32,000 nucleotides of DNA, from assembly GCA_002794465.1 (NCBI GenBank), contig MTSL01000041.1:107113-139112 (forward strand), written 5' to 3'. The translations under genes were made by a program, and so were the position numbers. The notes below the pieces were generated by a model, which made no database searches, had not been told where the DNA came from, and was given only the letters and a program-made list of their open reading frames with translations. Every line of letters starts with the position of its first letter. The stretch's first letter is position 1. Positions 2,538 to 28,804 of the stretch are shown here, piece after piece. The DNA comes from Paramicrosporidium saccamoebae KSL3 (taxonomy: Eukaryota > Fungi > Cryptomycota).

Positions 2538-4148
2538 ATGAGCAACACACTATACGTTCTCTTTGAGACGGCGTATGGGTATGCTCTATTTGAGCGCCTC
2601 GAAAGCGACGAAATCGGTCAAGAACTCGATGCAGTGACTGCGGCGATGCAAGACCTTGGCAAATTCGGCCGTGCCATCAAGCTCCAGGCCTTCCTTCCTT
2701 TTAAGAATGCGGCCGAGGCCCTGCAGAATATTAACGAGGTGAGTGAGGGCATTATGGGCGACACTCTGCGTCAGTTCTTGGAGCTGAATCTCCCAAAGAG
2801 CAAGAAGAGCAAGGATGGAACTCCCAAAAAGAGTGCCAGCTTCTCCCTGGGTGTCTCGGATAAAACCCTTGCCTCCACAATCAAGGGCGAGCTTGGTGTC
2901 GAATGTGTCTCAGATGAGACTGTCCTTGAGGTCGTCCGTGGGCTTCGTCTCTTTGCCCACACAATGCTGAAGCAGTTCCGTGAAGGCGACTTGGAGAAGG
3001 CACAACTTGGTCTTGGACATAGTTACTCCCGTGCCAAGGTCAAGTTCAACGTGCATCGTTCTGACAATATGATTATCCAGTCCAGTGCGCTTCTTGATCA
3101 GCTTGACAAGGACATTAACACTTTTGCCATGAGAATGCGCGAGTGGTACGGATGGCACTTCCCCGAGCTCACTCGTCTCATTCCCGATCATCGTCTTTTT
3201 GCCAAGGTGGCGCTGTCCATCCCTGACAAGTCCAGTGTCACCGAGGAGGATCTGCCCGCCATTGAGGCTGCCGCCGATGGAGATGCAGGCCTGGCAAAGC
3301 TCGTCTTGGAAGCCGCTCGCCATTCCATGGGAACTGACATTAATGAGCTCGACATGATCAACATTAAAAACTTTGCCCGCCGAGTGCTGGCGCTCAGCGA
3401 ATATCGCCTGAAGCTGCACTCTTACCTAACTGGGAAGATGGACATTGTCGCGCCCAACCTTAGTGCCCTGATTGGAGAAATTGTTGGGGCTCGTCTCATC
3501 TCGCATGCTGGCTCTTTAACCAACCTGAGCAAGTTCCCTGCCTCGACTGTTCAGATCCTGGGTGCTGAAAAGGCGCTCTTCCGTGCCCTAAAGACGAAAG
3601 GAAAGACACCCAAGTATGGGCTGATCTATCATTCGAGCTTTATTGGCAAGGCGGGAGCCAAGAATAAGGGACGCATTTCCCGTTATCTGGCAAACAAGTG
3701 CTCCATTGCCTCTCGCTTGGATTGCTTTGCTGATGTCCCCACAAACAAATTTGGTGATGCTCTGAGGGCTCAAGTCGAAGAACGTCTTGATTTCTACGAA
3801 AAGGGCACTCAACCCACCAAGAACGCCGATGTAATGTCCAAGGTGATGGCCATTGTCGAAAAGGAGCAGGCCAAGAAGGAGAAGAAGAGCAAGAAGAAGG
3901 ACGACAGCAAGGACGAGGTGGTCGTTGCTTCCCCCAAAAAGGACAAAAAGTCTCGCGAGTCCAAGAAGGAAGAGGCGGCCGCTGTCTCTCCCAAAAAGGA
4001 CAAAAAGTCTCGCAAGTCTGAAAGTGCCCCAGTTGAAGAGGAGGAGACTCCAAAGAAAAAGTCCAAAGTAGAAGTTGTGAGTAGCAAACAAGACAAACAG
4101 GACAAGAAGGAAAAGAAGGAGAAGAAGGACAAAAAGGTCAAGGCTTAG
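2538..4148 (+). CDS. NOP56: Nucleolar protein 56 (box C/D snoRNP core), intronless, with K/D/E-rich tail
   Basis: LGLGHSYSRAKVKFNVHRSDNMIIQS is the Nop56-type (not Nop58-type) signature. Also MREWYGWHFPEL, STVQILGAEKALFRALK, TPKYGLIYHS, KGRISRYLANKCSIASRLD and a KKD/E tail. Confidence 0.95.
   Translation: MSNTLYVLFETAYGYALFERLESDEIGQELDAVTAAMQDLGKFGRAIKLQAFLPFKNAAEALQNINEVSEGIMGDTLRQFLELNLPKSKKSKDGTPKKSASFSLGVSDKTLASTIKGELGVECVSDETVLEVVRGLRLFAHTMLKQFREGDLEKAQLGLGHSYSRAKVKFNVHRSDNMIIQSSALLDQLDKDINTFAMRMREWYGWHFPELTRLIPDHRLFAKVALSIPDKSSVTEEDLPAIEAAADGDAGLAKLVLEAARHSMGTDINELDMINIKNFARRVLALSEYRLKLHSYLTGKMDIVAPNLSALIGEIVGARLISHAGSLTNLSKFPASTVQILGAEKALFRALKTKGKTPKYGLIYHSSFIGKAGAKNKGRISRYLANKCSIASRLDCFADVPTNKFGDALRAQVEERLDFYEKGTQPTKNADVMSKVMAIVEKEQAKKEKKSKKKDDSKDEVVVASPKKDKKSRESKKEEAAAVSPKKDKKSRKSESAPVEEEETPKKKSKVEVVSSKQDKQDKKEKKEKKDKKVKA
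3933..4013 (+). repeat. Internal duplication in the NOP56 tail (SPKKDKKSR twice)
   Basis: Identical 24-mer cccaaaaaggacaaaaagtctcgc at 3933-3956 and 3990-4013. Confidence 0.85.
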
Positions 4149-4259: not shown

Positions 4260-6002
4260 ATGGTGCTGCCACTGATACTGCCGCTGATATTGGCCTTTTG
4301 TTTGGTAAATGTCTCGGCGCACTCATGGATGACATGTCCCGTTTCCTTTGATTCCAGCCCACATCGCCAGGTGGAGCTCGATGGGCCCTGCGAATCTCAC
4401 ATTGGCACTAGTGCCTTCCACGTCACTACTGTGAATGCCGGAGATCGTCTTAAAGTGGGCTGGGTCTCCAATAATGAAGGTGGCGGTTTTGTCCGTTTGG
4501 CGTTGGTTCCAGTCGCTTCCCGCTTTGATGCTTCTGCCTTTGATCAGAGCGTAATTAAGGTGGCTTGCTTCGGATATGATGAACGCAAGGGTCGCTTTGC
4601 CAATGGATTCTGTAGCCATCCATGTGGCGCGAGAGGGGCATGCGATTATCAGAAAACGCGGGATGACGTGAATAGATATGACACCACAATTGCGATTCCC
4701 ACAAACTTGGAGGACGGCTATTACGTCCTTCAGTGGAAAGGACTCTCTGCTGGTAATGAACGTCCCGCCTACAGCTGTTCATTGCTCCAACTCATCGGAG
4801 GCAACAGTACGCAAGCTCTATGCGGTCCGGCTAAAATGGTCATTCCAAAATGCAAAACGGTAGAGGGTGCAATGACTGCAAAATCGTTTTTGAGTGGCAA
4901 TCAAATGGGGTCATACTGCTTCAATGCAACCGGAAGCAACGATGTGGACTTTAATATGGGAAGGCTCGCAAAGAATTACATGTGCGATCCGAGACAGACT
5001 TGCAACATTTCAAATTCACGTGTTTACTGTAAACAGGAAATGGGGCGGGAGCCTCTTGACCCTTCAAATCCGGTCATGGACTGTCCAAAAATGGATCAGA
5101 CGGACCAGCAAGAGGATCAAGTCCCTCCAAAGAAGGGAATGTTGGCCGTTGAAGACACTATAACATCAATACCACTGCCTCCGCCAATTTATCCGTCCAC
5201 GACGATAACTCAAAGTCCCGAGTCCAAGACTACTACTACTACATCTAAAACTACGACCACATCCAAGACTACTTCCAAAACTACGACCACGACTACGTCA
5301 AAAACTACGACCACGTCCAAGACTACCACTACATCTAAAACCACGACCACGTCCAAGACTACCACTACATCTAAAACCACGACCACATCCAAGACGACGA
5401 CTACAACCAGACCCGTGTCCACAACAACAACTAGGACTACCACAACTATTACCACTACCGGATCAATCACGCCAGGTGGGCCTTGCTCTGCTCCTGACAG
5501 CCAATTTTTCTGTTACAACACCGGTTATTATGCGCGATGCGTCTTTGGTTCTTGGGTTGTACAGCCCTGCTCACCTGGGACAAGATGCCAGGATGGCACC
5601 TGCGTCTTAGCCTTGCCCGGAGATCCTATAAGATTCACTACTACAATCAGAAGAACTACTACCACCACTACAACCAGAAGAACTACCACCACATCTACCC
5701 GTGTGCCAACATCGGCAGTGAGAATTACGCCAGGCGGAGACTGCAATCAACCCGACACTAAATACTTTTGCTATTCAAACACTCGGCTGGCGCGGTGCAT
5801 ATTCAATACTTGGTGGATTCAAAGTTGCCCACAAGGAACCGCCTGTGTGAATGGAAGATGTGGCTTTGCAAAACGCAAATCTCCCGTCAATGTTCAAGAT
5901 CCACACATTGGTGACAACGCAGAGGAAGAACGCATCTGTCGTCGTAATTGGGTCCGTCGAAATAGGGTGCGCAGAGTGAGACGTGGAGTCAGACGGCATT
6001 AA
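4260..6002 (+). CDS. Secreted LPMO-like (N-terminal His) protein with Thr-rich linkers, two CBM19-like Cys-rich modules and an Arg-rich tail; intronless, 580 aa
   Basis: Hydrophobic signal peptide ending VNVSA, followed directly by His21 (HSWMTCP). LPMO-like core strands (LKVGWVSNNEGGGFVRLAL; IPTNLEDGYYVLQW...YSC). (TTTTSK)n linker. Two 46-aa modules at 5466-5603 and 5724-5861 with the pattern ARCxxxxWxxQxCxxGTxC. Confidence 0.7.
   Translation: MVLPLILPLILAFCLVNVSAHSWMTCPVSFDSSPHRQVELDGPCESHIGTSAFHVTTVNAGDRLKVGWVSNNEGGGFVRLALVPVASRFDASAFDQSVIKVACFGYDERKGRFANGFCSHPCGARGACDYQKTRDDVNRYDTTIAIPTNLEDGYYVLQWKGLSAGNERPAYSCSLLQLIGGNSTQALCGPAKMVIPKCKTVEGAMTAKSFLSGNQMGSYCFNATGSNDVDFNMGRLAKNYMCDPRQTCNISNSRVYCKQEMGREPLDPSNPVMDCPKMDQTDQQEDQVPPKKGMLAVEDTITSIPLPPPIYPSTTITQSPESKTTTTTSKTTTTSKTTSKTTTTTTSKTTTTSKTTTTSKTTTTSKTTTTSKTTTTSKTTTTTRPVSTTTTRTTTTITTTGSITPGGPCSAPDSQFFCYNTGYYARCVFGSWVVQPCSPGTRCQDGTCVLALPGDPIRFTTTIRRTTTTTTTRRTTTTSTRVPTSAVRITPGGDCNQPDTKYFCYSNTRLARCIFNTWWIQSCPQGTACVNGRCGFAKRKSPVNVQDPHIGDNAEEERICRRNWVRRNRVRRVRRGVRRH
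5223..5460 (+). repeat. Coding minisatellite: 18-bp unit (TTTTSK) with a 36-bp higher-order unit; mucin-like Thr linker
   Basis: Exact 36-mer accacgtccaagactaccactacatctaaaaccacg at 5310-5345 and 5346-5381, flanked by diverged 18-bp units. Confidence 0.9.
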
Positions 6003-6029: not shown

Positions 6030-8753
6030 TTATTGGGCTGTATATTTCAAGAGATTAAACAGGGTTGCTGCATTGGCAATCCGTTGGTCTGCGTCAGCAG
6101 TATTCGTGTCCCCAATAGCGCAGACATAGATGGGGCAATCGGCTTCATAACTACATAATCTCCTCACATTGGGACTTGAGCTGTTCGGTGATAATGCTGA
6201 TGGGCTCGCACCCGGCAGTAGCCCGAGACAGCGGCCGATCATTTCATGACAGAACGTATATAGCTCTTCTTCATCTCGAGATTTTACGAATATGCTCAGG
6301 AATCCCACCTTATGATCGCCTTTAAGAACCGACTTGAGCACATTTCCGATGGCTTGCCGTTGTCCAAGAGACAAAAGTCTTATTCGCAGCCGTTTCTGGC
6401 AAGAGACGGCATGGACTGGAAAGTTTGATCCGATAGTGTCTTGTATATGGGCTTGACACTCCTTGGCCTGCCTTTCACCAAAGACGGGATCTGCATTCTC
6501 GTAATGCCAAATATAGGCTGCACTCTTTCTTTCAAACCAGGAGCCAGGCGTGCGCTCCGTGTAGTACTCCAAGATTGTTTGCACCCTCTCCCACCAGTGC
6601 GGATCAGGATCATTAACGCAGCATTTCCACTCGGCATCTTTGGATAACCGAATGCAGTAACCATCCTCAGCACATAGGACAAGGTGATCGAATCCCGAAA
6701 ATGTATGATCCATCTGCTCGGCGCTCCGTTCACTGATGAGGGCAACTATATTTTCATCGCTACTCAGCAAAGACAGGCAGGACTTTAGCTCCTTGAGTAA
6801 CTCAAGCGACGCTGGAATGTTTTTAAAGCCGGGCATGAGGGCATCGTAGTCAATGATGAACAGCCTTTTACCATCCTCAATGGAGTTCACAGATTGATAA
6901 TCTCTGCAAAATGAAATCTGGTTAATCAGGGGAGCAACTAGTGACTGACGCTGCCTCTCAATGTCCGATTGCGTGATTAGGGAGGCTAAGAAGGATGCTG
7001 CCCAAGTATTAGCAGTGTTGCTCCTAACGTTTCGCAGCAGGCTTCCATGTCGTTCTCTCTTTTCCTGCTCATCCATTTCCAGAGCCACGAGAATTGCATC
7101 AGCAACATCCTAAAAGCTATAAACTCGCCCCATAATGAATACTATTGGATCCCACGGATTCACTCGCAGAGCTGCTCCAAATGTCGAGCTTGTGCCAGCA
7201 AATTCCGATATAATAACTGTCCCGAATTTGCCCTGCTGGCAAAGAACATATTCATGCGATGTCAAGTTCATCCCATCGCGGAGACTAGTAATTAAGCACA
7301 CATCGGCTGAGCCCAAGAGAGCAAGGTATTGCTCAAACGAAACCTCCTGCGTGGATATGACCACGGGACAATAATCGAGATTGCCAAATCGAGTGTTCAC
7401 CTCATCAGCAAGATCCATCACAGACTGTAGATACTTTCCATGACCGGCAACGGCCATCTGATACAATATTGCTCGCCCTCGCCATTCGGCGTTATCACGG
7501 AGAAACTGCATAAATCCAAGAATTTTTTGCCGAATTCCCTTTACGGGATCAACCTTGTCGCGGGCAATTATAATCTTTTTCCCCTGATACTTTTCCATTA
7601 TGTGGTTAGTCATTTCCGTAATCTCTCGAAGAGCCAGTCTCTTTTCAATTCTTCCAGGATCAATTCCAATGGGAAAAATCCCGATGGGAACAATTCGCCC
7701 CTCAACCTGCACGCCCCTTGGAGTGCATGCATATCCTAGAATGCGTGTGCAGCATTGGAAGAAATGACGGGCGTATCCGTAGGTTTGAAATCCCACTAGA
7801 TCGGACGCCAAAATTCCCTCTAATATCTCCTGCCGTACTGGCAAGCAGCGGAATATCTCGCTTGTTGGAAATGGGACATGGAGAAAGACGCCAATTGTTG
7901 CATTGGGCAGCGCTGTGCGAACCATTTGTGGAACGAGCAATAAGTGATAGTCATTGATCCAAATAACGTCATCGGGCTCATAGATTTGGATGATTTTATC
8001 AGCAAAGCACTGGTTGGTTCGGACATATGCCCTCCAGTCTCCTTGGCTTGAGGTTGCTTGCAGAGCCAACTGTTGATCTGGCAGCAGATTGTGAAATATT
8101 GGCCACATGGTCCTTTTACAAAACCTAACATGGTCGTCAAAATTTCCATCGATAACATGACATCTATAGTCCGCATTTAATTTATCCAGCACTCTTTCTT
8201 TCTCGGAAAGATCAGATGGAAGATCTCCAGCCAATGTTCCAATCCATAGTCGATTTTTGAGTGCACTAATGGCATTGGTAAGGCCAGAGTTGCCCCCAAA
8301 ATACGGTCTTATCTCCCAAGTGTCTTGCCCAGAATCTGTATAAGGTTCTGCAATTAAAAAACTGTCCACGGAACTGACACTTGAGCTTATTGCAGGCATT
8401 CCATCAGGGACAAATGCATTCTTTAGTGGCCTGATGGTCGGCGACGGTATCGGAGTGCTAAAATCGTGGGGATGACCAGTAGGAGATGAATCGTCCGCCT
8501 GTATTCCAAGCAAAGTAGCGGTCATTCTATCCAGGCTTCTCCTTCGATTATCATTCCTGGGACGATTGGCAATATCTCCTCCGTCAATCAATGGCGATTC
8601 CAAGTGACATGCAAAGGTGGGACGGACATGAAATGGTTTGGTGGTCAGATACGCATTGTTATTGTCTACAGCCGATTTAGCAATGTCGAGGTAGGTTGTA
8701 GTGTATGGAAGGTAATTTGCCGCTACCAAGACACGTCGCTCCTTATCGCCCAT
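6030..8753 (-). CDS. Trehalose-6-phosphate synthase/phosphatase complex subunit (GT20 plus HAD-like TPP domain), probably regulatory Tsl1/Tps3/TslA-like; one 33-nt intron at 7110-7142
   Basis: GT20 motifs WINDYHLLLVPQMVR, FLHVPFPTSEIFRCLP, DLVGFQTYGYARHF and SLRDGMNLTSHEY. TPP-like ERTPGSWFERK and IWHYENADPVFG. The intron GTATTC...TTTTAG joins PWDPI to DVADAI in frame. First ATG at 8753; the ORF-track start at 8834 is TTG. Confidence 0.9.
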
Positions 8754-8899
8754 GAATGTGGACCAATAATTAAGAGTCCGTATTGTAGTATTATAACAGA
8801 CCGGGGATTCAAACAGAGCAGGCTCTACTTCCAACTCTCACCCCAAGTAATATTCATGCAGCAGTCAGAAACGATAACAATATTTAAATTTCAAATATC

Positions 8900-9776: not shown

Positions 9777-12700
9777 TCACAACGATGCCATGTTTTTGCA
9801 TAAAATGTCAATGATGAGTCGTGAGAGTTGTCTCGATTGGGAATGTGCACGGTTGTCAAGAGAAATGCATAGACTGCTGTCAAATTGTTCAGCAATCGTT
9901 TCGGCTTCATCGATTACAGAGGACGGAAGGCCTGCCATGGCAGCCACATTCATTCCGTAACTCTTTGGCGATATTCCTGGTGTTAATTTATATAAAAAGG
10001 TCACTCTTCGGCAATCTGGATCTAGCGCACAAGACATGTACTGGCAGGATACGGTCGCCTCTTGTAAAAAGTCAACAGCAAGAGGCCTGTAATGCGTTGC
10101 AAAGAGGCCAATGCACATGGTGACACGGGCGAGCGTAAGAAGAACGGCATGCGCAATAGCCATTCCATCAAACGTACTTGTTCCACGACCAAGCTCGTCC
10201 AAGATTACCAAGGATTTTGACGTGCCCTCTCGGAGCACCTTGGCCGCATCAAGTAATTCGACCATAAAAGTCGACTGGCCAGCGATAATATTGTCGTTTG
10301 CCCCGAGACGTGTAAAAATACGATCGACAGGAGAGATTTGGCATTCTCGGGCCGTCACATAGCATCCAAGCTGCGCCAAGACAACCGCCAAGCATGTCTG
10401 CCTCAAGAGAGTTGACTTTCCTCCCATATTAGGACCGGTTAACACAATAATTCGCTTTCCATCCTCGTCGCTGCCCAAAGAAATATCATTTGGGATGAAT
10501 GAAGATTGTCGATCTTCAGAGATGCAAGGATGGCGCAATTCCTTGATGACACATTTTGCAGACGAATCCTCCACAATCAATGGCCGACATTTCGGCTCAT
10601 TCATCGCCGCCGATGCCTTTGACAGACTCAATAAGCAATCCAATTTTGCAATAGACGAAACAATTGGACGCCAAATGTCACTGTTACTGTCGAATTTGTT
10701 TAAAATCTTGCCGTATACATTTCTTAGGACAGCTACCCAATAAGTAAAACTTGCTTCACTATAATACCTGATCGTCTCTCTTCCCACTCCTGATACGACT
10801 TGACCAATTCCTTGATGGTTGGTGTCCAGTATCGCTTAACACTTTTGGTCTTGGACATTAAAATATATTCTTTGGGGACGTCAGTCTCGGCGGGAATCTC
10901 CAACTGAAACAATTCCTTTCCGACATCGCGATACTTTGCTCCGCGAATACTAAAGATTAGAAATCAAATGTAAAAAACCGAAGAAGCTTTTCTTGGCCTT
11001 GCAAATACGCTTCCAACTTGGTCTTGACAGCAGCAAACTGGGCTTGGGCTTCGTCGTAGTCCTGCTCAATTCCAGGATATGGAATGACTTGGCCTACACA
11101 TAATTAGGACATTTCAGTAGAAAGTACCCTCTTTCAAAGCAAGTTGGCGATCAAAGGCCGATAGATAATAATCGATGACAGCAGAGTACTCTGGGACTTC
11201 AGCAAGCACAGATTTCAGCAAACAGGGCGTCTCTTGTGATTCTACAAGCTGTGCTATGCGAGTGATTGCCTTAAACGCATCTATTGTAGCAATAAAGTCC
11301 TTCAATCGAATGCTTCCGGTATGAACCCTGCTCAATGTACGTTCCAAGTCCGGAAGGGTCTTTAACATGTCAGTAAAGCTATCCGCAAGTCCTGGCTCAT
11401 TTAAAAAGTACTCGACAACATCCAACCGTGCATTAATCTCATTGGCACGGCAAAGCGGATGGCAGAGCCAATTGTTAAGAAGACGCTTCCCAAACGGTGT
11501 ACTGCAATAATCAATCATTCCCAAAAGAGTGCCCTTCCTTTGATCGGCCGCAGATATGGAGGAGCGTAGCGGACTGGGAAGGATATCAAGATTTAGCAGA
11601 GTCTGACCATCCAAAACCATTGAAGAGCTGTCGGGTTTCAAAATGGTAAAGTTTTGATACGACAATAATCCACGATCCAGCTTTAGCTCGCGGAGGTACC
11701 AGAGCAAAGCCCCAAACGCCAGGAACGACAGTTGGTTGGCATCATGAATATGCTTGAGAGTATCAGGCCAGCACGAGAAATATTGCCCCATGTCCAATTC
11801 ATTGGCAATTTTAGATTTTCCCCAAAACTCCTTATCCGAAACAGCTTCCGTAATGAGTGCCGCTGGCAATAACGTCTTGATGGTTCGTGTCGTCTCGGAA
11901 CTTGTCGAGCCCTTTTCCAAGATAACCTCTTTGGGCTGTAACTGCATTAGGATCGTTTCCAAGATGGCACGCATCCCATCATCTTGGAAGTCGCACAATT
12001 TAAAGCTACCGCCGGCGGCATCTACAATAGCCAACCCAATCTCTACTTTACTGCCGCTGCAAACCTTTTCTTTGATGGCAACACAGTAAGAGGCAGAATC
12101 TGAGGCGATCATGGAGGGCTCGGTTATTGTCCCGGCGGTCAGAATGCAAGTGAGCTCACGTCGGATAATTTTTTCAGCTTTACTGTCAGACTCTTTCTCC
12201 CTAATCGACTTTCCGATTGCAGTCTCCACCTGGTCGACTCTTGCAATTTTATATCCTGCGGCAACAAATCTTGCTGCCCACATCTCAAAAGTTGCTTCGG
12301 GGACCCCTACCATGCGCATGTTCACACGATCAGTCATTTTCAAATCAAATTCTCTAGATCCAATGTCGGCATCATTCTCATATAGCTCATAAAACTTTCC
12401 CTTTTTAAAAAAGACCACAGTGTCGAATAGACGGCTTTTGATCTCCCAAAATTGCTTCTCGAATGGTGTAAACTTTAACCATTGTGATTTAGGAATATGT
12501 AGAGTGCGAGGATTATAGCCTTCGTCATTAGGACTCTTACCATCGGCGTCCTTAATCATTGCCAGCCAAGGATATCGATCCCCCGATGTATCTCGGTTGT
12601 CAGTTCCCTTGTCATCCTCATCTAGAGAGACGCCATTCTTGCGAAACTTTCTCAAGGGTGCGTTGAGACTTGTTGGTTCCATATCCATTGATTCGTCGAG

Positions 12701-13027
12701 GATGAAATCCTGCAAATCTACCTTCCCTGTAAGGGTACCTGGCGTGTCATCTTCCGAAACCATTTCGTAGAATGAACTCGAGGGAATCAGAGGAACAGTT
12801 TCCGTAGTTCCCAGAGTTTTCGTAGCTTCCTTCCTCTTCAAAGGGGAGGTTTGAACTTTGGCCTTATCAAAGTCAGATAATTGGCGCTTTGGGGACGGCG
12901 ATGGGAAGAATGAAAGCAGGCTGGTCTGTCGTTTGCTCCCAGCGGGACTGCTAGTTGGAATATCCCCGCCCATAAAGCTTGTGACAGTCTTTTCCTTCAA
13001 AGTCTTGTTGAATTCTTCGACAGTCAT
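9777..13027 (-). CDS. MSH6: DNA mismatch repair protein Msh6 (MutS-alpha); introns at 11094-11127 (34 nt), 10950-10978 (29 nt) and 10733-10767 (35 nt)
   Basis: PIP box KRQTSLLSFF; YNPRTLHIP; FFKKGKFYELYE (Phe-X-Glu mismatch-binding motif); Walker A GPNMGGKST; DELGRGTSTFDG; FLYKL and SYGMNVA. The three GT-AG introns restore one reading frame. Confidence 0.95.
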
Positions 13028-13086
13028 GAAGCGGCAGGATATGCTGTTCGCGCCAACTTTAATCTTTATTACACAATTTGGACCAT

Positions 13087-14131
13087 TTATGGAGATTTGG
13101 CAGCAGTTGGGACCGCTTCTAACGGCCAATTATACATTAATAATCCAGACATGACTAGGATAAAGCCTGCGAGGAATTGCCACGAAAACTACAAGTGATG
13201 AGTGAGGCACGCTTTGCGACCTACCGATTCATGAAACAGGAAATAACCCACAAGTAGGGAGAAAAAGTTGACCGTCAACAAGGACAGATTAAAAAGAGTG
13301 GCAGATGCACGAAGCATAACGATCGGAAGGATGGAATGGAATATGATCATGCTCAAACAATACACGACAAAATGCACCCCAACCCAAGAAAACGCATGCT
13401 CGGTAAATTGAGTCACCTCATATCGACGCCAAATGGTCCTAAAATTAGGGGAAAAATTGAAAATACAGATATAAAATACTCCAAACTGATGCAAAACTTG
13501 AATTCATCGCCAAATATTCGATTAGAGAGGCGCCCTCCTTTGTTACATATTCGGTAAGAACATTTGACATGCCATACAGTACTGCGGACGCAACACACAT
13601 GGCATGACCCGCAAATGCTGGACCAGAAGCTTCCCCCACCTGGCCGCTATCCTCAAAATACAGCTGAACAATGCTGGTAAACGCCACACCGGAAATGGCA
13701 ATCAATGTGCCACATATGTTGGTCCAGCTATATTTGGTGCCGAGGAACACTTGTGATAAGAACATTGCTGTTGGAGTGGAGAGGGTGGAAATGAGCGCAA
13801 TAGTCGGCATACCAAGATGGTTGTATGCATGGAGTGCTAAAACACTAGCTGTTGAATCAAGGACTGAGATTAACATAGTTGTGGGGATCTTCCTGCGCAT
13901 ATTCCTTGTCCAAAAGTACTCCACAGTGAAATGAATCAATGCGAGCCAAAATAAGAAGGCAACCAACATGTACACTGTCGTAGTTTGAAGGGCAGCAAAG
14001 TCCACATGATATTTCCTATTCAGTATTTGGCTGATAGTGCTAGAAATTGTCATACATACACTCAAAACCTGGCCAAGGACCAGGTTTCCATGTCGAGACG
14101 CACTACCGGGCATTCTTGGCGAGCCAATCAT
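13087..14131 (-). CDS. SLC35F1/F2-like drug/metabolite-transporter-superfamily protein; introns at 13439-13466 (28 nt) and 13189-13224 (36 nt)
   Basis: About 10 hydrophobic segments. LGQVLS, YGMSNVLTEY and SATLFNLSLLTVNFFSLLVGYFLF match the SLC35F pattern. The last exon FSWQFLAGFILVMSGLLMYN...KSP* ends at 13087. Confidence 0.8.
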
Positions 14132-26644: not shown

Positions 26645-28804
26645 TCACGATGCAAATTCAATCCCAGATCGATTCACCGCCTGTTTTAAGAACGCCAAAA
26701 TTCGCGAGTGGCGCACCCATTTCTTTTGGCTATCTGCGGTTTGCTTGCAGCGGACTTTGAGACATAGTTTTAATGAGTCAAGATTGCGATCAGACTGGCC
26801 ATTATCGGCAGCAATAACAGCTCTCAGTTCGAATGACTGGTAATAGTCTTGACTGTAATGATGCAGGAAGGTTTCGATTCTTTTTCGAAGACTTGCCAGC
26901 CGAGAAGTCTCTTCTTCCATTGTTAGCTTGTTCTTATCTGGTGTGCATAAGGTGAACTCGACTCTCTCCCATTGCTCAGATCCACGTGAAAGATTTGTCA
27001 ATGGATTAGCTGCAAGAACATGATTCGGCACGATTACAAAAAGTCCATTCCACCTCTTAAATACAGTATTTTGAATATTAATGTTGGTCACAGTCAGTAC
27101 GTCTTCGTCACTAGATCCGACCTCTCTTCCCATCACAACACGATCACCTACGTCATACGGGTGTATCACAAACAGAAATATGAGTGAATGAAACATTTTG
27201 TTTGTGGCTTCAAAGATGAGGAAATTTAGTGTGAGCACTATTGATGCAGTGAACCCTATCAGGTTGACGACTCTGACACCAAACAGAGCCAGCAAGAACA
27301 AAAATAGTCCAGCTGTCATGGCGCACATACCAATTGTGTCAAGAATAGATAGGACGGATCCAGTATTTGCAACACTTTGTGCGAGATTTCTTTGTTCTCG
27401 GAAAATTCGCACAATTGCCCCGCGAAATTCGTTTTTGGTAATCGCACCATCTTTGTCATAGTCGAACACATCAAATGCATCCTTGCTAGCCGCATCATTA
27501 ATAATGATAGCGGAGAAATCTTCCAAGGAGAGTATTTTTGTATTCGGCGCGCAGAGATAATGGAAAATCATACGTGCCATAATTTTTGCTTCGTGATCGG
27601 TCCTCGGAGGTGCGGTTGCAATTGTTTCGTATCCGGACACTTGAATTGTGCGAATAATTTCATCACGGAATTCTGAAAATTCTACCGTGGCATAATCCTC
27701 TAGTGCGAGCCCGTTGACAATTCTGTTATAAGATGACGTCCTTCGATCTCGTCTCCACCAGGCAACGATCTGTTCAGGGATGACAAATGGGAGATTGAAC
27801 ATAAAATCTCGAGTGGTTTGTCCAATATTTACGGCATTATGTCTTGCAGCAGTATTATCAATAGTATATCTGCGGGCGATACGCTGTCGTTTGGCAGCCA
27901 AAAGGAGCATGTCAACGACGTGGATTTTGAATCGGTTCTCAATGAGCCGACTTTTGAACGTTTTTTCCTGAAAATTGCTCCGGAGTGATATCATGACAAA
28001 AGAACCAGCGGCTGATGTAAGGCCACAAATAAAAATGAAGACCAAAATGCGAGGCACATAACTAAAGCCACAGTATCCGAGATATCCGAGCGCTTTATCG
28101 GCCTCCAAAAACTCGAACAAATTTTCTTGTGTGAGCAGGTGCACACAGTCATCAGGAAAGTAAGCCTTCCAGTATAGGCCGATAACCACAGCCCCTATGC
28201 AAACTGAAAGAGACGCGGCAATATTTTCGATTTTCGAAGGGAGATCTGATCGCGACAAAGTGGATGTCGATTTGACTAACCGGACAATTTTCCGAATTGC
28301 AGTTTGCGACCAGACGGGGACGAAAACAGAAAGAAAGACTAGTGTGACCCATAAGTGAAATGGCACTTGAGCAATAACTGGCACTCCTATCGATGTGAGC
28401 GAGCATAACCACAGAATGACACACATGGCCATGATTACGAGCAATACACTGTTCAGAAAATTTTTGTACCTGACATTCACGTTATTAGGAGCTGGAGGCG
28501 TCGTTCCCGGGGCAGAAATTTCATCGACAAAGGCCTCTTCATATTCGCTCTCTTCGTCACGGCGATCATCTCCAATCCAATCGAATGAGTCTTGACTTGC
28601 ATCCGAGAGATTGTCGCTCGGTGGAGGCCTTTCATCAGCGCTAGAATAGTCTTCCGCTGGCATGGGGACTGCTACCCTTCCAGTTTCACGAGCATTTGAA
28701 GATGATGGATCAGGGGTGTCCTTGCTGGGGGTGCTGTAAACCGTATCTTCTTCCCCTTGAAGATCTCCATTTTGAGATTCTGATTTCCATTCAGATTCAT
28801 TCAT
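26645..28804 (-). CDS. MscS-like mechanosensitive ion channel with EF-hand (Msy1/Msy2-type), intronless, 719 aa
   Basis: EF-hand DVFDYDKDGAITKNEF. MscS core LIFLFVIHPYDVGDRV...NINIQNTVFKRWNG...VPNHVLA...ITNLSR-like segment. Multiple N-terminal TM helices. Confidence 0.92.
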   Translation of the reverse strand: MNESEWKSESQNGDLQGEEDTVYSTPSKDTPDPSSSNARETGRVAVPMPAEDYSSADERPPPSDNLSDASQDSFDWIGDDRRDEESEYEEAFVDEISAPGTTPPAPNNVNVRYKNFLNSVLLVIMAMCVILWLCSLTSIGVPVIAQVPFHLWVTLVFLSVFVPVWSQTAIRKIVRLVKSTSTLSRSDLPSKIENIAASLSVCIGAVVIGLYWKAYFPDDCVHLLTQENLFEFLEADKALGYLGYCGFSYVPRILVFIFICGLTSAAGSFVMISLRSNFQEKTFKSRLIENRFKIHVVDMLLLAAKRQRIARRYTIDNTAARHNAVNIGQTTRDFMFNLPFVIPEQIVAWWRRDRRTSSYNRIVNGLALEDYATVEFSEFRDEIIRTIQVSGYETIATAPPRTDHEAKIMARMIFHYLCAPNTKILSLEDFSAIIINDAASKDAFDVFDYDKDGAITKNEFRGAIVRIFREQRNLAQSVANTGSVLSILDTIGMCAMTAGLFLFLLALFGVRVVNLIGFTASIVLTLNFLIFEATNKMFHSLIFLFVIHPYDVGDRVVMGREVGSSDEDVLTVTNINIQNTVFKRWNGLFVIVPNHVLAANPLTNLSRGSEQWERVEFTLCTPDKNKLTMEEETSRLASLRKRIETFLHHYSQDYYQSFELRAVIAADNGQSDRNLDSLKLCLKVRCKQTADSQKKWVRHSRILAFLKQAVNRSGIEFAS

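What the first reader, a model, noticed from the sequence alone, without database searches (positions are those of the whole stretch)
4260..4860. Secreted LPMO-like domain with His1 intact but Glu at the expected second histidine-brace position
Seen: signal peptide cleavage exposes His21 (CAC, 4320-4322). The strand W-V-S-N-N-E-G-G-G-F-V-R-L has Glu73 (GAA, 4476-4478; two base changes from a His codon, so not a single sequencing error). A late QW...YSC segment is present. Known: copper LPMOs bind Cu with His1 plus a second His that follows such a strand (AA11 H-G-G-G-S-C, AA15 N-H-x-G-Y-F, AA10 A-x-H), with an aromatic residue near the late Cys. Inference: this is a His/Glu variant metal site, a non-catalytic chitin-binding or copper-scavenging LPMO-like protein, or a new subfamily. 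Other His residues (H35, H47, H54, H120) could substitute, so the site must be modelled. This is the best candidate in the window for new biochemistry.
Basis: partly seen in the sequence, partly recalled or inferred. Interest (0 to 1): 0.75.

Follow-up and report, generated by a model that had tools for sequence, protein, structure and literature searches.

The report
LPMO-fold chitin protein, decayed copper site
This fungal gene encodes a secreted protein that keeps the shape of a copper-dependent polysaccharide-cutting enzyme (LPMO) and carries two chitin-binding modules, but two of its three copper-site residues are gone, so it most likely binds rather than cuts.

Summary
ORF 4260-6002 (+) encodes a 580-aa secreted protein. 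His21 follows the signal peptide, and Glu73 (GAA, 4476-4478) lies in W-V-S-N-N-E-G-G-G-F.

An AlphaFold2 model (pLDDT 95.7) matches only LPMOs at the top of a Foldseek search of the PDB (AA9, AA11, then AA10). Homologues form an LPMO-like family with no Pfam model of its own and no description in the papers I searched. It occurs in cnidarians, a ctenophore, a nucleariid, chytrids and Basidiobolus. Its consensus is H-S-W-M-S-C-P ... N-N-H-G-G-G ... Y-Y-S-C.

Position 73 is therefore the second brace histidine.

The positional orthologues, all next to Nop56, show a mosaic of losses at the His1/His2/Tyr triad: H-E-A, G-H-A, H-R-Y, A-Q-A, G-Q-S. One relative lacks the domain altogether. Of the 57 columns conserved in canonical members, nearly all others are kept.

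Best reading (about 0.6): a non-oxidative, chitin-associated LPMO-like protein, tethered by two CBM19 modules.

Main rival (about 0.2): His21 plus Glu73 form a YcnI-type "mono-histidine brace" that binds Cu(II). H+E is conserved in the closest orthologue but occurs nowhere else among about 150 family representatives.

I could not obtain model coordinates, so the site geometry is untested.

The parts
4260..6002 (+). Complete single-exon ORF of 580 aa: signal peptide, LPMO-like domain, Pro-rich motif, Thr-rich linker, CBM19, linker, CBM19, basic tail.
   Evidence: Homologues align across the whole domain without gaps.
4260..4319 (+). Signal peptide MVLPLILPLILAFCLVNVSA, with predicted cleavage A20|H21.
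   Evidence: Read from the sequence (-1 Ala, -3 Val). Homologues all place H-S-W right after the leader. SignalP was not run.
4320..4322 (+). His21 (CAC), the predicted N-terminal residue of the mature protein and first brace position. Retained.
4320..4802 (+). LPMO-type beta-sandwich core (aa 21-181).
   Evidence: AF2 pLDDT 95.7. Foldseek top hits are AA9 and AA11. The family profile hits AA9 and AA11 PDB chains over the IPTNL..YVLQ..YSC..GG motif. Pfam AA9 is sub-threshold at 17.6 bits against a cut-off of 27.8.
4476..4478 (+). Glu73 (GAA) at the family's second brace-His position (N-N-H-G-G-G in canonical members).
   Evidence: The closest orthologue, L005, also has Glu (GAG).
4617..4619 (+). 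His120 in C-x-H-P-C. Near-invariant in the HSW family whether or not the member has a brace, so it probably has a structural or second-shell role and is not a substitute ligand.
4731..4733 (+). Gln158 in Y-V-L-Q-W. Invariant across the family and nearly so in the sister family.
4767..4769 (+). Ala170 (GCC) at the position three residues before Cys173. This position aligns with the axial Tyr of the AA9 Q-x-Y-x-x-C motif and is Tyr in all 26 canonical members.
4803..5093 (+). Family-specific Cys-rich extension of the domain (aa 182-278), modelled with high confidence. The whole domain (aa 21-278) has 14 Cys.
5169..5198 (+). I-P-L-P-P-P-I-Y-P-S motif that opens the C-terminal module. In relatives, the same motif opens stand-alone CBM19 genes.
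5223..5459 (+). Thr/Ser/Lys-rich mucin-like linker (TTTTSK repeats), encoded by an 18-nt tandem repeat at 5232-5409. Presumed to be O-glycosylated (inference).
5484..5603 (+). CBM19-type six-Cys chitin-binding module 1 (aa 409-448).
   Evidence: Pfam CBM_19 scores 26.1 bits against a cut-off of 20.1, in 2 stretches. Cys pattern.
5637..5714 (+). Second Thr/Arg-rich linker.
5742..5861 (+). CBM19-type module 2 (aa 495-534).
2538..4148 (+). Nop56 gene. It serves as the synteny anchor that identifies positional orthologues of the LPMO-like gene in related fungi.
6030..8834 (-). Trehalose-phosphatase and GT20 trehalose-P synthase ORFs, the downstream synteny anchor.

Best explanation
The gene encodes a secreted, modular, chitin-associated protein of an early-diverging fungus.

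Its N-terminal domain is a well-folded member of an uncharacterised LPMO-like family related to AA9 and AA11. The ancestral family has a canonical copper site: N-terminal His, a second His in N-N-H-G-G-G, and an axial Tyr in Y-x-S-C.

In the lineage of this fungus the copper site has been abandoned. His2 is Glu and the axial Tyr is Ala; only His1 remains. The rest of the scaffold stays under purifying selection.

The protein therefore most likely does not carry out copper-dependent oxidative cleavage. I infer that it acts as a binding or structural protein. Two C-terminal CBM19 modules on long, presumably O-glycosylated, Thr-rich linkers would anchor it to chitin in the fungus's own wall or in a host or prey. 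The LPMO-like domain would contribute a conserved surface for polysaccharide or partner binding.

Shown: the fold, family membership, the residue substitutions, their mosaic pattern in orthologues, and retention of the scaffold. Inferred: loss of catalysis, chitin as the target, and the binding role.
For: Fold:
- AF2 pLDDT 95.7 and pTM 0.93.
- All Foldseek PDB hits with E <= 0.001 are LPMOs or LPMO-like proteins. AA9 gives E = 1e-6. AA11 gives the best TM score (0.53-0.55 of the target).

Identifying the copper triad:
- 26 of 43 aligned members have H/H/Y at positions 21/73/170.
- The family profile aligns p-Y-y-S-C to the axial-Tyr motif Q-x-Y-x-x-C of AA9 chains in the PDB.
- More than 50 representatives of the sister family also keep H/H/aromatic.

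Targeted decay of the site:
- 57 columns are at least 90% conserved in canonical members. The 15 non-canonical members keep almost all of them.
- The outliers are exactly positions 21 (12/15 changed), 73 (13/15) and 170 (11/15), plus 227 and 97.
- The window protein keeps 52 of the 57.

Mosaic pattern in positional orthologues, all directly downstream of Nop56:
- window H-E-A; L005 H-E-A; P0001 G-H-A; P0002 H-R-Y; P0003 A-Q-A; P0005 and P0029 G-Q-S.
- A relative with 87% identical Nop56 has only CBM19 genes in the slot and no LPMO-like domain.

Still a working gene:
- The 580-aa ORF is intact.
- Against L005, dN is 0.32 while dS is saturated; Nop56 shows dS of about 3.5.

Chitin link:
- Two CBM19 modules score above the Pfam cut-off.
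- Relatives carry CBM19, CBM2, CBM18 or GH18.

Precedent: LsAA9B is an AA9 without a His brace or copper site (PMC10354095, citing PMC6851306).
Against: - His21 is retained, and the His21 + Glu73 pair is conserved in the closest orthologue despite 34% divergence across the domain.
- An N-terminal His plus a Glu carboxylate binds Cu(II) with nanomolar affinity in YcnI (PMC8424229). 'No metal site' is therefore not proven.
- No member of this family, canonical or not, has been characterised, so even the ancestral LPMO activity is an inference.
- The tree is a simple NJ tree, and only two species sample the H-E-A lineage.
Confidence: 0.6

Rival explanations
1. Mono-histidine brace. His21 (free amine plus N-delta) and the Glu73 carboxylate form a YcnI-type 2N2O Cu(II) site on an LPMO scaffold. 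The protein would then be a copper-binding, copper-scavenging or copper-handling wall protein rather than an oxidase.
For: - Glu73 occupies exactly the backbone position of the brace His, with identical flanks.
- By simple stereochemistry, Glu O-epsilon reaches about as far from C-alpha as His N-epsilon2 (my inference).
- H+E is conserved in window and L005 with different Glu codons, GAA and GAG.
- YcnI binds Cu(II) through an N-terminal His, Glu50 and water, with Kd of about 2 nM and a nearby Trp (PMC8424229). Trp23 and Trp68 are conserved here.
- Two family members give weak CopC Pfam hits.
Against: - H+E occurs in one shallow lineage only. Among about 150 representatives, the other non-canonical members have Q, R, L, N, K or Y at position 73, so there is no recurrent choice of a carboxylate.
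- Sister orthologues have lost His1 itself (G or A). This shows that the shared function of the orthologous group does not need the N-terminal chelate.
- Two conserved residues at 66% overall identity are not statistically remarkable.
- The side-chain geometry was not inspected.
Confidence: 0.22
2. Still an active LPMO. Another histidine (H47, H54 or H120) or a rearranged loop completes a brace, or the His/Glu site supports oxidative chemistry on chitin.
For: - His1 and the fold are intact.
- H47 and H54 are conserved in the closest orthologue.
- CBM19 modules are typical companions of chitin-active enzymes.
Against: - The family's brace His is unambiguously position 73.
- H120 is equally near-invariant in canonical members, so it is not a replacement.
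- H35 is not conserved even in L005. H47 is absent from P0001, P0002 and P0003, and H54 from P0002 and P0003.
- The axial Tyr is also lost.
- A hard carboxylate ligand would disfavour Cu(I), going by general copper chemistry (my knowledge).
- Orthologues without His1 cannot be LPMOs.
Confidence: 0.07
3. The LPMO-like domain is a decaying relic on its way to loss, and only the CBM19 part is functional.
For: - A close relative (L003) keeps only CBM19 genes in the syntenic slot.
- Another (L002) has a separate CBM19x2 gene.
Against: - The frame is open across the domain.
- 52 of 57 family-conserved columns are kept, and all 14 Cys of the domain are present.
- dN of 0.32 against saturated dS indicates purifying selection.
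- The AF2 model is very confident.
Confidence: 0.06

Closest known systems
AA11 and AA9 lytic polysaccharide monooxygenases (CAZy)
   Same: - Same beta-sandwich fold.
- N-terminal His directly after the signal peptide.
- The family consensus H-G-G-G after a strand resembles the AA11 H-G-G-G-S-C (this comparison is from my memory).
- The C-terminal motif IPxNL..G.YvLq...Y..C..L.i.GG aligns with AA9 and AA11 chains.
- Sub-threshold Pfam AA9 hits in 28 of 32 members.
   Different: - Sequence similarity is marginal: profile against PDB gives E = 0.0025 for AA9 and 0.06 for AA11.
- The window protein scores 17.6 bits against the AA9 cut-off of 27.8.
- The domain has an extra Cys-rich extension of about 95 residues.
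- The taxonomic range differs: cnidarians, a ctenophore, a nucleariid, chytrids and other early-diverging fungi.
- The window protein lacks the second His and the axial Tyr.
LsAA9B-type LPMO-like proteins without a histidine brace (Frandsen et al. 2019, PMC6851306, as cited in PMC10354095)
   Same: LPMO fold retained, copper-site residues replaced, function non-oxidative or unknown. These are the closest analogy for what the window protein probably is.
   Different: - Different family (AA9).
- According to PMC10354095, LsAA9B lacks the brace motif and any copper coordination site. The window protein keeps His1 and loses His2 and Tyr.
- Here the loss is a mosaic across orthologues.
YcnI / DUF1775 mono-histidine brace copper proteins (PMC8424229)
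   Same: The possible ligand set is the same: an N-terminal His plus one Glu carboxylate, with conserved Trp residues nearby, on an Ig/cupredoxin-like beta-sandwich.
   Different: - Bacterial, with no detectable homology (no DUF1775 hit).
- In YcnI the ligands are conserved family-wide. Here H+E is confined to one shallow lineage.
- Copper binding here is untested.
X325 / Bim1 LPMO-like copper proteins
   Same: LPMO-like fold, non-LPMO role, fungal, cell-surface associated. Weak Foldseek hit to LaX325 (6ibi, E about 4e-3).
   Different: X325 keeps both brace histidines and adds an Asp ligand (PMC10952591). The window protein has lost the second His.

Membership tests
Copper LPMO (functional class) | His as the first residue of the mature protein | tested here: met
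   VSA|H21-S-W. Homologues all begin H-S-W after their leader. SignalP was not run.
Copper LPMO (functional class) | Second histidine completing the brace | tested here: not met
   The family position is N-N-H-G-G-G; the window has Glu73.
Copper LPMO (functional class) | Axial Tyr/Phe near the late Cys | tested here: not met
   Ala170 in P-A-Y-S-C. The position aligns to the AA9 axial Tyr and is Tyr in all 26 canonical members.
Copper LPMO (functional class) | LPMO beta-sandwich fold | tested here: met
   AF2 pLDDT 95.7. All Foldseek hits with E <= 0.001 are LPMOs or LPMO-like proteins.
Copper LPMO (functional class) | Copper binding and oxidative polysaccharide cleavage | not testable with these tools
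   Needs ICP-MS, EPR and product analysis.
AA9 (Pfam PF03443) | Score at or above the Pfam gathering threshold | tested here: not met
   17.6 bits against 27.8, E = 0.0036. The full-length scan lists no AA9 hit.
AA11 | Sequence or structure similarity sufficient for family assignment (CAZy/dbCAN model) | tested here: inconclusive
   Best TM among PDB hits (9exj, 9hdg, 4mai; TM 0.53-0.55 of the target; 17-19% identity). Profile E = 0.06. dbCAN/CAZy models were not available.
Unclassified HSW...NNHGGG...YYSC LPMO-like family (this work) | Full-length domain homology and the conserved scaffold columns | tested here: met
   E = 3e-98 to the nearest member. 52 of 57 conserved columns retained.
CBM19 chitin-binding module | Pfam PF03427 above the gathering threshold; six-Cys pattern | tested here: met
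   26.1 bits against 20.1, two stretches. Two C-x-C-x-C-x-C-x-C-x-C modules at aa 409-448 and 495-534.
YcnI / DUF1775 mono-His brace | Homology to DUF1775 | tested here: not met
   No DUF1775 hit in the Pfam scans. Any resemblance would be convergent.
YcnI / DUF1775 mono-His brace | N-terminal His and Glu carboxylate positioned to chelate one Cu(II) | not testable with these tools
   Both residues are present, but the structure tool gives no coordinates.
X325 / Bim1 | Complete His brace plus Asp ligand | tested here: not met
   The second His is absent. The Foldseek hit to 6ibi is weak.

The most novel reading that the evidence does not exclude
In the window/L005 lineage, a eukaryotic LPMO scaffold has been converted into a YcnI-like mono-histidine brace: His1 amine and imidazole, the Glu73 carboxylate, and water. 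This would be the first such site in a eukaryote and in an LPMO fold. It would give a chitin-tethered Cu(II)-binding protein for copper capture or buffering at the cell wall.

Separately, the parent family with an intact brace would be a new LPMO (AA) family shared by non-bilaterian animals, nucleariids and early fungi.
Probability: 0.2. Interest if true: 0.8.

Novelty: new variant of a known kind. Interest (0 to 1): 0.55.

Why it matters
Three things would interest LPMO researchers.

1. An apparently undescribed LPMO-like family with a canonical His brace. It has no Pfam model of its own. It occurs in cnidarians, a ctenophore, a nucleariid and early-diverging fungi. Members are often fused to chitin- or cellulose-binding modules or to GH18. 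The family would widen the known range of LPMOs and deserves biochemical testing.

2. A natural experiment within that family. Fungal lineages have specifically and repeatedly dismantled the three copper-site residues while preserving the rest of the domain. This points to a second, non-oxidative function of the LPMO fold. It also supplies orthologue sets for finding out what that function is.

3. The His1 + Glu73 combination. It can be tested cheaply as a possible mono-histidine brace.

If the plain reading holds, the window protein itself is a pseudo-enzyme. That is useful for annotation, because it should not be counted as an active LPMO, but it is not new chemistry.

Tried and rejected
- Sequence search of the full protein against PDB chains gave only low-complexity noise.
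- phmmer of the N-terminal half of a canonical member against the PDB, meant to align the second His with AA11, gave nothing relevant.
- Exact look-up of the window protein in public assemblies found nothing on record.
- NG86 dN/dS against the closest orthologue could not be computed because dS is saturated. Only dN and the comparison with Nop56 are usable.
- A scan of metagenome contigs for more orthologues returned one locus, L009. It is a chance match of the HSWMTCP pattern to tandem small bacterial ORFs, not a relative.
- I looked for model coordinates in the scratch machine to measure His21-Glu73 distances. None are provided.
- Literature searches for a description of this family found nothing that matches it. 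The 2017 'LPMO14' HMM paper concerns other families.
- 'Sequencing error at codon 73' is rejected. The orthologue L005 also encodes Glu, with a different codon.
- 'A paralogue elsewhere in the window' is rejected.
- Rfam and tRNA scans of the window found nothing.
Full report
**1. What is in the sequence**

The + strand carries one uninterrupted ORF, 4260..6002, of 580 aa. It starts with a hydrophobic leader, MVLPLILPLILAFCLVNVSA. This is followed by H21-S-W-M-T-C-P, with the His codon CAC at 4320-4322.

The strand K-V-G-W-V-S-N-N-E-G-G-G-F-V-R-L-A-L-V contains Glu73 (GAA, 4476-4478).

The finding's right-hand border (4860) is too short. The conserved domain extends to about aa 278 (5093). The gene then continues with:
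- an I-P-L-P-P-P-I-Y-P-S motif;
- a Thr-rich linker encoded by an 18-nt tandem repeat;
- two six-Cys modules that Pfam recognises as CBM19 (26.1 bits against a cut-off of 20.1), separated by a second Thr/Arg-rich linker;
- a basic tail.

The neighbours are eukaryotic housekeeping genes: Nop56 upstream, and trehalose-P synthase/phosphatase and MutS downstream.

The best named Nop56 matches are early-diverging fungi, all at 62-68% identity: Syncephalis, Basidiobolus, Mortierella and chytrids. Unnamed assemblies reach 72-89%. The organism is thus an early-diverging fungus that I cannot place more precisely.

**2. The domain is an LPMO fold from a family with no model of its own**

Pfam has no significant hit for the N-terminal domain, and PDB sequence search finds nothing.

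Homology search finds a coherent family. It includes:
- cnidarians (Clytia, Hydra, Hydractinia, Dendronephthya);
- the ctenophore Mnemiopsis;
- the nucleariid 'Nk52';
- chytrids (Gorgonomyces, Entophlyctis, Rhizophlyctis, Nowakowskiella);
- Basidiobolus;
- many unnamed assemblies.

Several members carry CBM2 or CBM19.

An exhaustive profile search of 1.84 billion cluster representatives gives 48 representatives at E <= 1e-30 and 299 at E <= 1e-10. The weaker tier is a sister family with the pattern H-S-Y-L-T-x-P-x-S-R ... W-P-R-N-N-H-x-G-G-F-I-R ... T-L-Q-W-A-W-F-G-G ... D-Y-Y-S-C. Members of it are fused to hevein-type chitin-binding domains, CBM2 or a GH18 chitinase.

An AlphaFold2 model of aa 21-278, built on a 43-sequence alignment, is very confident: pLDDT 95.7 and pTM 0.93. 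In a Foldseek search of the PDB, every hit with E <= 0.001 is an LPMO or LPMO-like protein.
- AA9 has the best E-values (1e-6).
- AA11 has the best TM scores (0.53-0.55 of the target).
- AA10, AA16 and X325 follow.

The family profile also hits AA9 (E = 0.0025) and AA11 (E = 0.06) chains directly, over the motif I-P-x-N-L-x-x-G-x-Y-v-L-Q ... Y-y-S-C-a-k-L-x-i-x-G-G. Of 32 members, 28 give sub-threshold Pfam AA9 hits.

I could not run dbCAN, so whether CAZy already bins these proteins, for example with AA11, remains open. I found no paper describing the family.

**3. The copper triad of the family, and what the window protein has**

In the alignment, 26 of 43 members have all three of the following:
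- His directly after the leader;
- His in N-N-H-G-G-G, the window's position 73, with flanks that align without any gap;
- Tyr three residues before the late Cys.

The third position is the one that the profile-to-PDB alignment places on the axial Tyr of the AA9 Q-x-Y-x-x-C motif. More than 50 representatives of the sister family show the same H/H/aromatic triad.

This identifies 21/73/170 as the predicted His-brace-plus-axial-Tyr site.

**4. The decisive context: targeted, mosaic loss in orthologues**

The nearest relatives of the window protein are positional orthologues. In each case the gene lies directly downstream of Nop56, usually with the trehalose synthase or MutS genes beyond it.

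| Orthologue | Nop56 identity to the window | Triad (21/73/170) |
|---|---|---|
| window | - | H-E-A |
| L005 | 89% | H-E-A |
| P0001 | 84% | G-H-A |
| P0002 | not measured (only the Nop56 C-terminus lies on its contig) | H-R-Y |
| P0003 | 80% | A-Q-A |
| P0005 | 80% | G-Q-S |
| P0029 | 79% | G-Q-S |

In L003, a relative whose Nop56 is 87% identical, the slot holds two genes. Each consists only of a signal peptide, the P-L-P-P-P-I-Y-P-S motif and CBM19 modules, with no LPMO-like domain at all. L002 has an additional stand-alone CBM19x2 gene.

A chytrid clade (C/K/R/Y - R/Q - I/V) and a third group (A/D/R - L/H - Y/F) are also non-canonical. So are further representatives (AQV, DNV, RRI, QRY, GRT, GQY, RHV, EYS and others).

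I then took the 57 alignment columns that are at least 90% conserved in canonical members. I asked what the 15 non-canonical proteins do at each one.
- Almost every column is kept, including all Cys positions, W68, N72, G75/G76, R79, H120, Y155 and Q158.
- The outliers are positions 21 (12/15 changed), 73 (13/15) and 170 (11/15).
- Two further columns stand out, 227 (13/15) and 97 (9/15). I cannot explain these without coordinates.
- The window protein keeps 52 of the 57.

The pattern is a specific dismantling of the predicted copper site, with the rest of the domain preserved. Different orthologues keep different remnants. Constraint on the site must therefore have been relaxed before the lineages split, and the individual residues were lost independently afterwards.

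**5. Is the gene alive?**

Yes, as far as sequence can tell.
- The ORF is intact.
- Against L005 the domain is 66% identical, with dN = 0.32 while dS is saturated. Nop56 in the same pair shows dN = 0.078 and dS of about 3.5. This implies dN/dS well below 1.
- The AF2 model is confident throughout.

**6. Best explanation and rivals**

Most likely (about 0.6), this is a secreted, non-oxidative LPMO-like protein. It would be tethered to chitin by two CBM19 modules on glycosylated linkers. It would be a pseudo-enzyme whose conserved beta-sandwich now serves a binding or structural role. LsAA9B, an AA9 lacking the brace and any copper site, is the known analogue (PMC10354095, citing PMC6851306).

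- Bacillus YcnI binds Cu(II) with Kd of about 2 nM. It uses the amine and N-delta of an N-terminal His, one Glu carboxylate and water, with a Trp nearby. This is the 'mono-histidine brace' (PMC8424229; reviewed in PMC10952591).
- Glu73 sits on the backbone position of the lost His. The closest orthologue conserves it together with His21, using a different codon (GAG against GAA).

Against this rival:
- H+E is seen in this one shallow lineage only.
- Other non-canonical members have Q, R, L, N, K or Y at position 73, with no recurrence of a carboxylate.
- Sister orthologues have lost His1 itself.
- Two residues conserved at 66% overall identity prove nothing.

The codons deserve a note. A route from His (CAY) to Glu (GAR) through Gln (CAR) takes two single-base steps, and Gln (CAA) is what the orthologue P0003 has. 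However, P0001 keeps His (CAT), so the Glu and Gln changes are probably independent.

A still-active LPMO using another His (about 0.07) is unlikely.
- H120 is near-invariant in canonical members too.
- H35 is not conserved even in L005. H47 is absent from P0001, P0002 and P0003, and H54 from P0002 and P0003.

A relic domain on its way to loss (about 0.06) conflicts with the preserved scaffold.

**7. What could not be done**

- The structure tool returns no coordinates.
- SignalP and dbCAN were not available.
- No biochemical data exist for any member of the family, so 'LPMO' for the canonical members is itself an inference from the fold, the triad and the attached modules.

**8. Verdict**

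The LPMO-like fold, the Glu at the brace-His position and the novelty of the subfamily are right. 'New biochemistry' is the minority reading.
- The more solid and more general result concerns the family. It is an undescribed LPMO-like family with a canonical brace in early-branching animals and fungi, and within it the copper site has been removed specifically and repeatedly in fungi.
- Interest 0.55. Novelty: new variant of a known kind.

Noticed in passing
L003:2276-3620 and L002:2991-3764 (syntenic with window 4260-6002): In a close relative (Nop56 87% identical), the slot between Nop56 and the trehalose genes holds two genes made only of signal peptide, PLPPPIYPS motif and CBM19 modules, with no LPMO-like domain. 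Another relative has an extra stand-alone CBM19x2 gene. The C-terminal half of the window protein therefore exists elsewhere as an independent gene.
   Followed up: partly
window 4548-4550 (Ser97) and 4938-4940 (Asn227): Family columns 97 (Asn) and 227 (Gly) change in 9/15 and 13/15 non-canonical members, tracking the loss of the copper triad. They may be second-shell residues of the site. This remains unexplained without coordinates.
   Followed up: no
P0228-P0309 (representatives): A larger sister family (HSYLTxPxSR ... WPRNNHxGGFIR ... TLQWAWFGG ... DYYSC) keeps H/H/Tyr (or Phe/Trp) almost without exception. Members are fused to hevein-type chitin-binding domains, CBM2, GH18 chitinase or PKD/EGF domains. 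It also has no Pfam model for the catalytic-like domain.
   Followed up: partly
L009:1244-2262 (metagenome contig ULTC01019983.1): A chance pattern match: four or five tandem small ORFs of the form MKKLVLK...QVQGG...SVWKDCTARPTLTQTV...GGC[HPY][ST]WMTC(P). They look like precursor peptides of a ribosomally made natural product in a bacterium, flanked by peptidase-like genes. They are unrelated to the LPMO-like gene.
   Followed up: no
window 6030-8834 (-) and 9777-13129 (-): The trehalose-phosphatase and GT20 synthase parts lie in two adjacent ORFs, as do the MutS domains I-III and V. A relative (L001) has one 890-aa TPS-TPP product and L007 one 976-aa MutS. The splits are therefore probably short introns rather than separate genes.
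   Followed up: no
window 3588-4141 (-) and 5210-5746 (both strands): Long ORFs opposite or overlapping the Lys/Glu-rich tail of Nop56 and the Thr-rich linker are by-products of low-complexity repeats, not genes.
   Followed up: no
window 1-32000: There are no tRNA genes and no Rfam family at gathering score in the whole window. A second mechanosensitive-channel/EF-hand gene (26645-28804, -) also lies near Nop56 in relatives (L001, L006), so synteny extends beyond the gene of interest.
   Followed up: partly
A3 members: Two family members give weak Pfam CopC hits (best E = 0.016) and six give weak Kre9/KNH hits. This is consistent with a shared Ig/cupredoxin-like sandwich, but too weak to interpret.
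   Followed up: no
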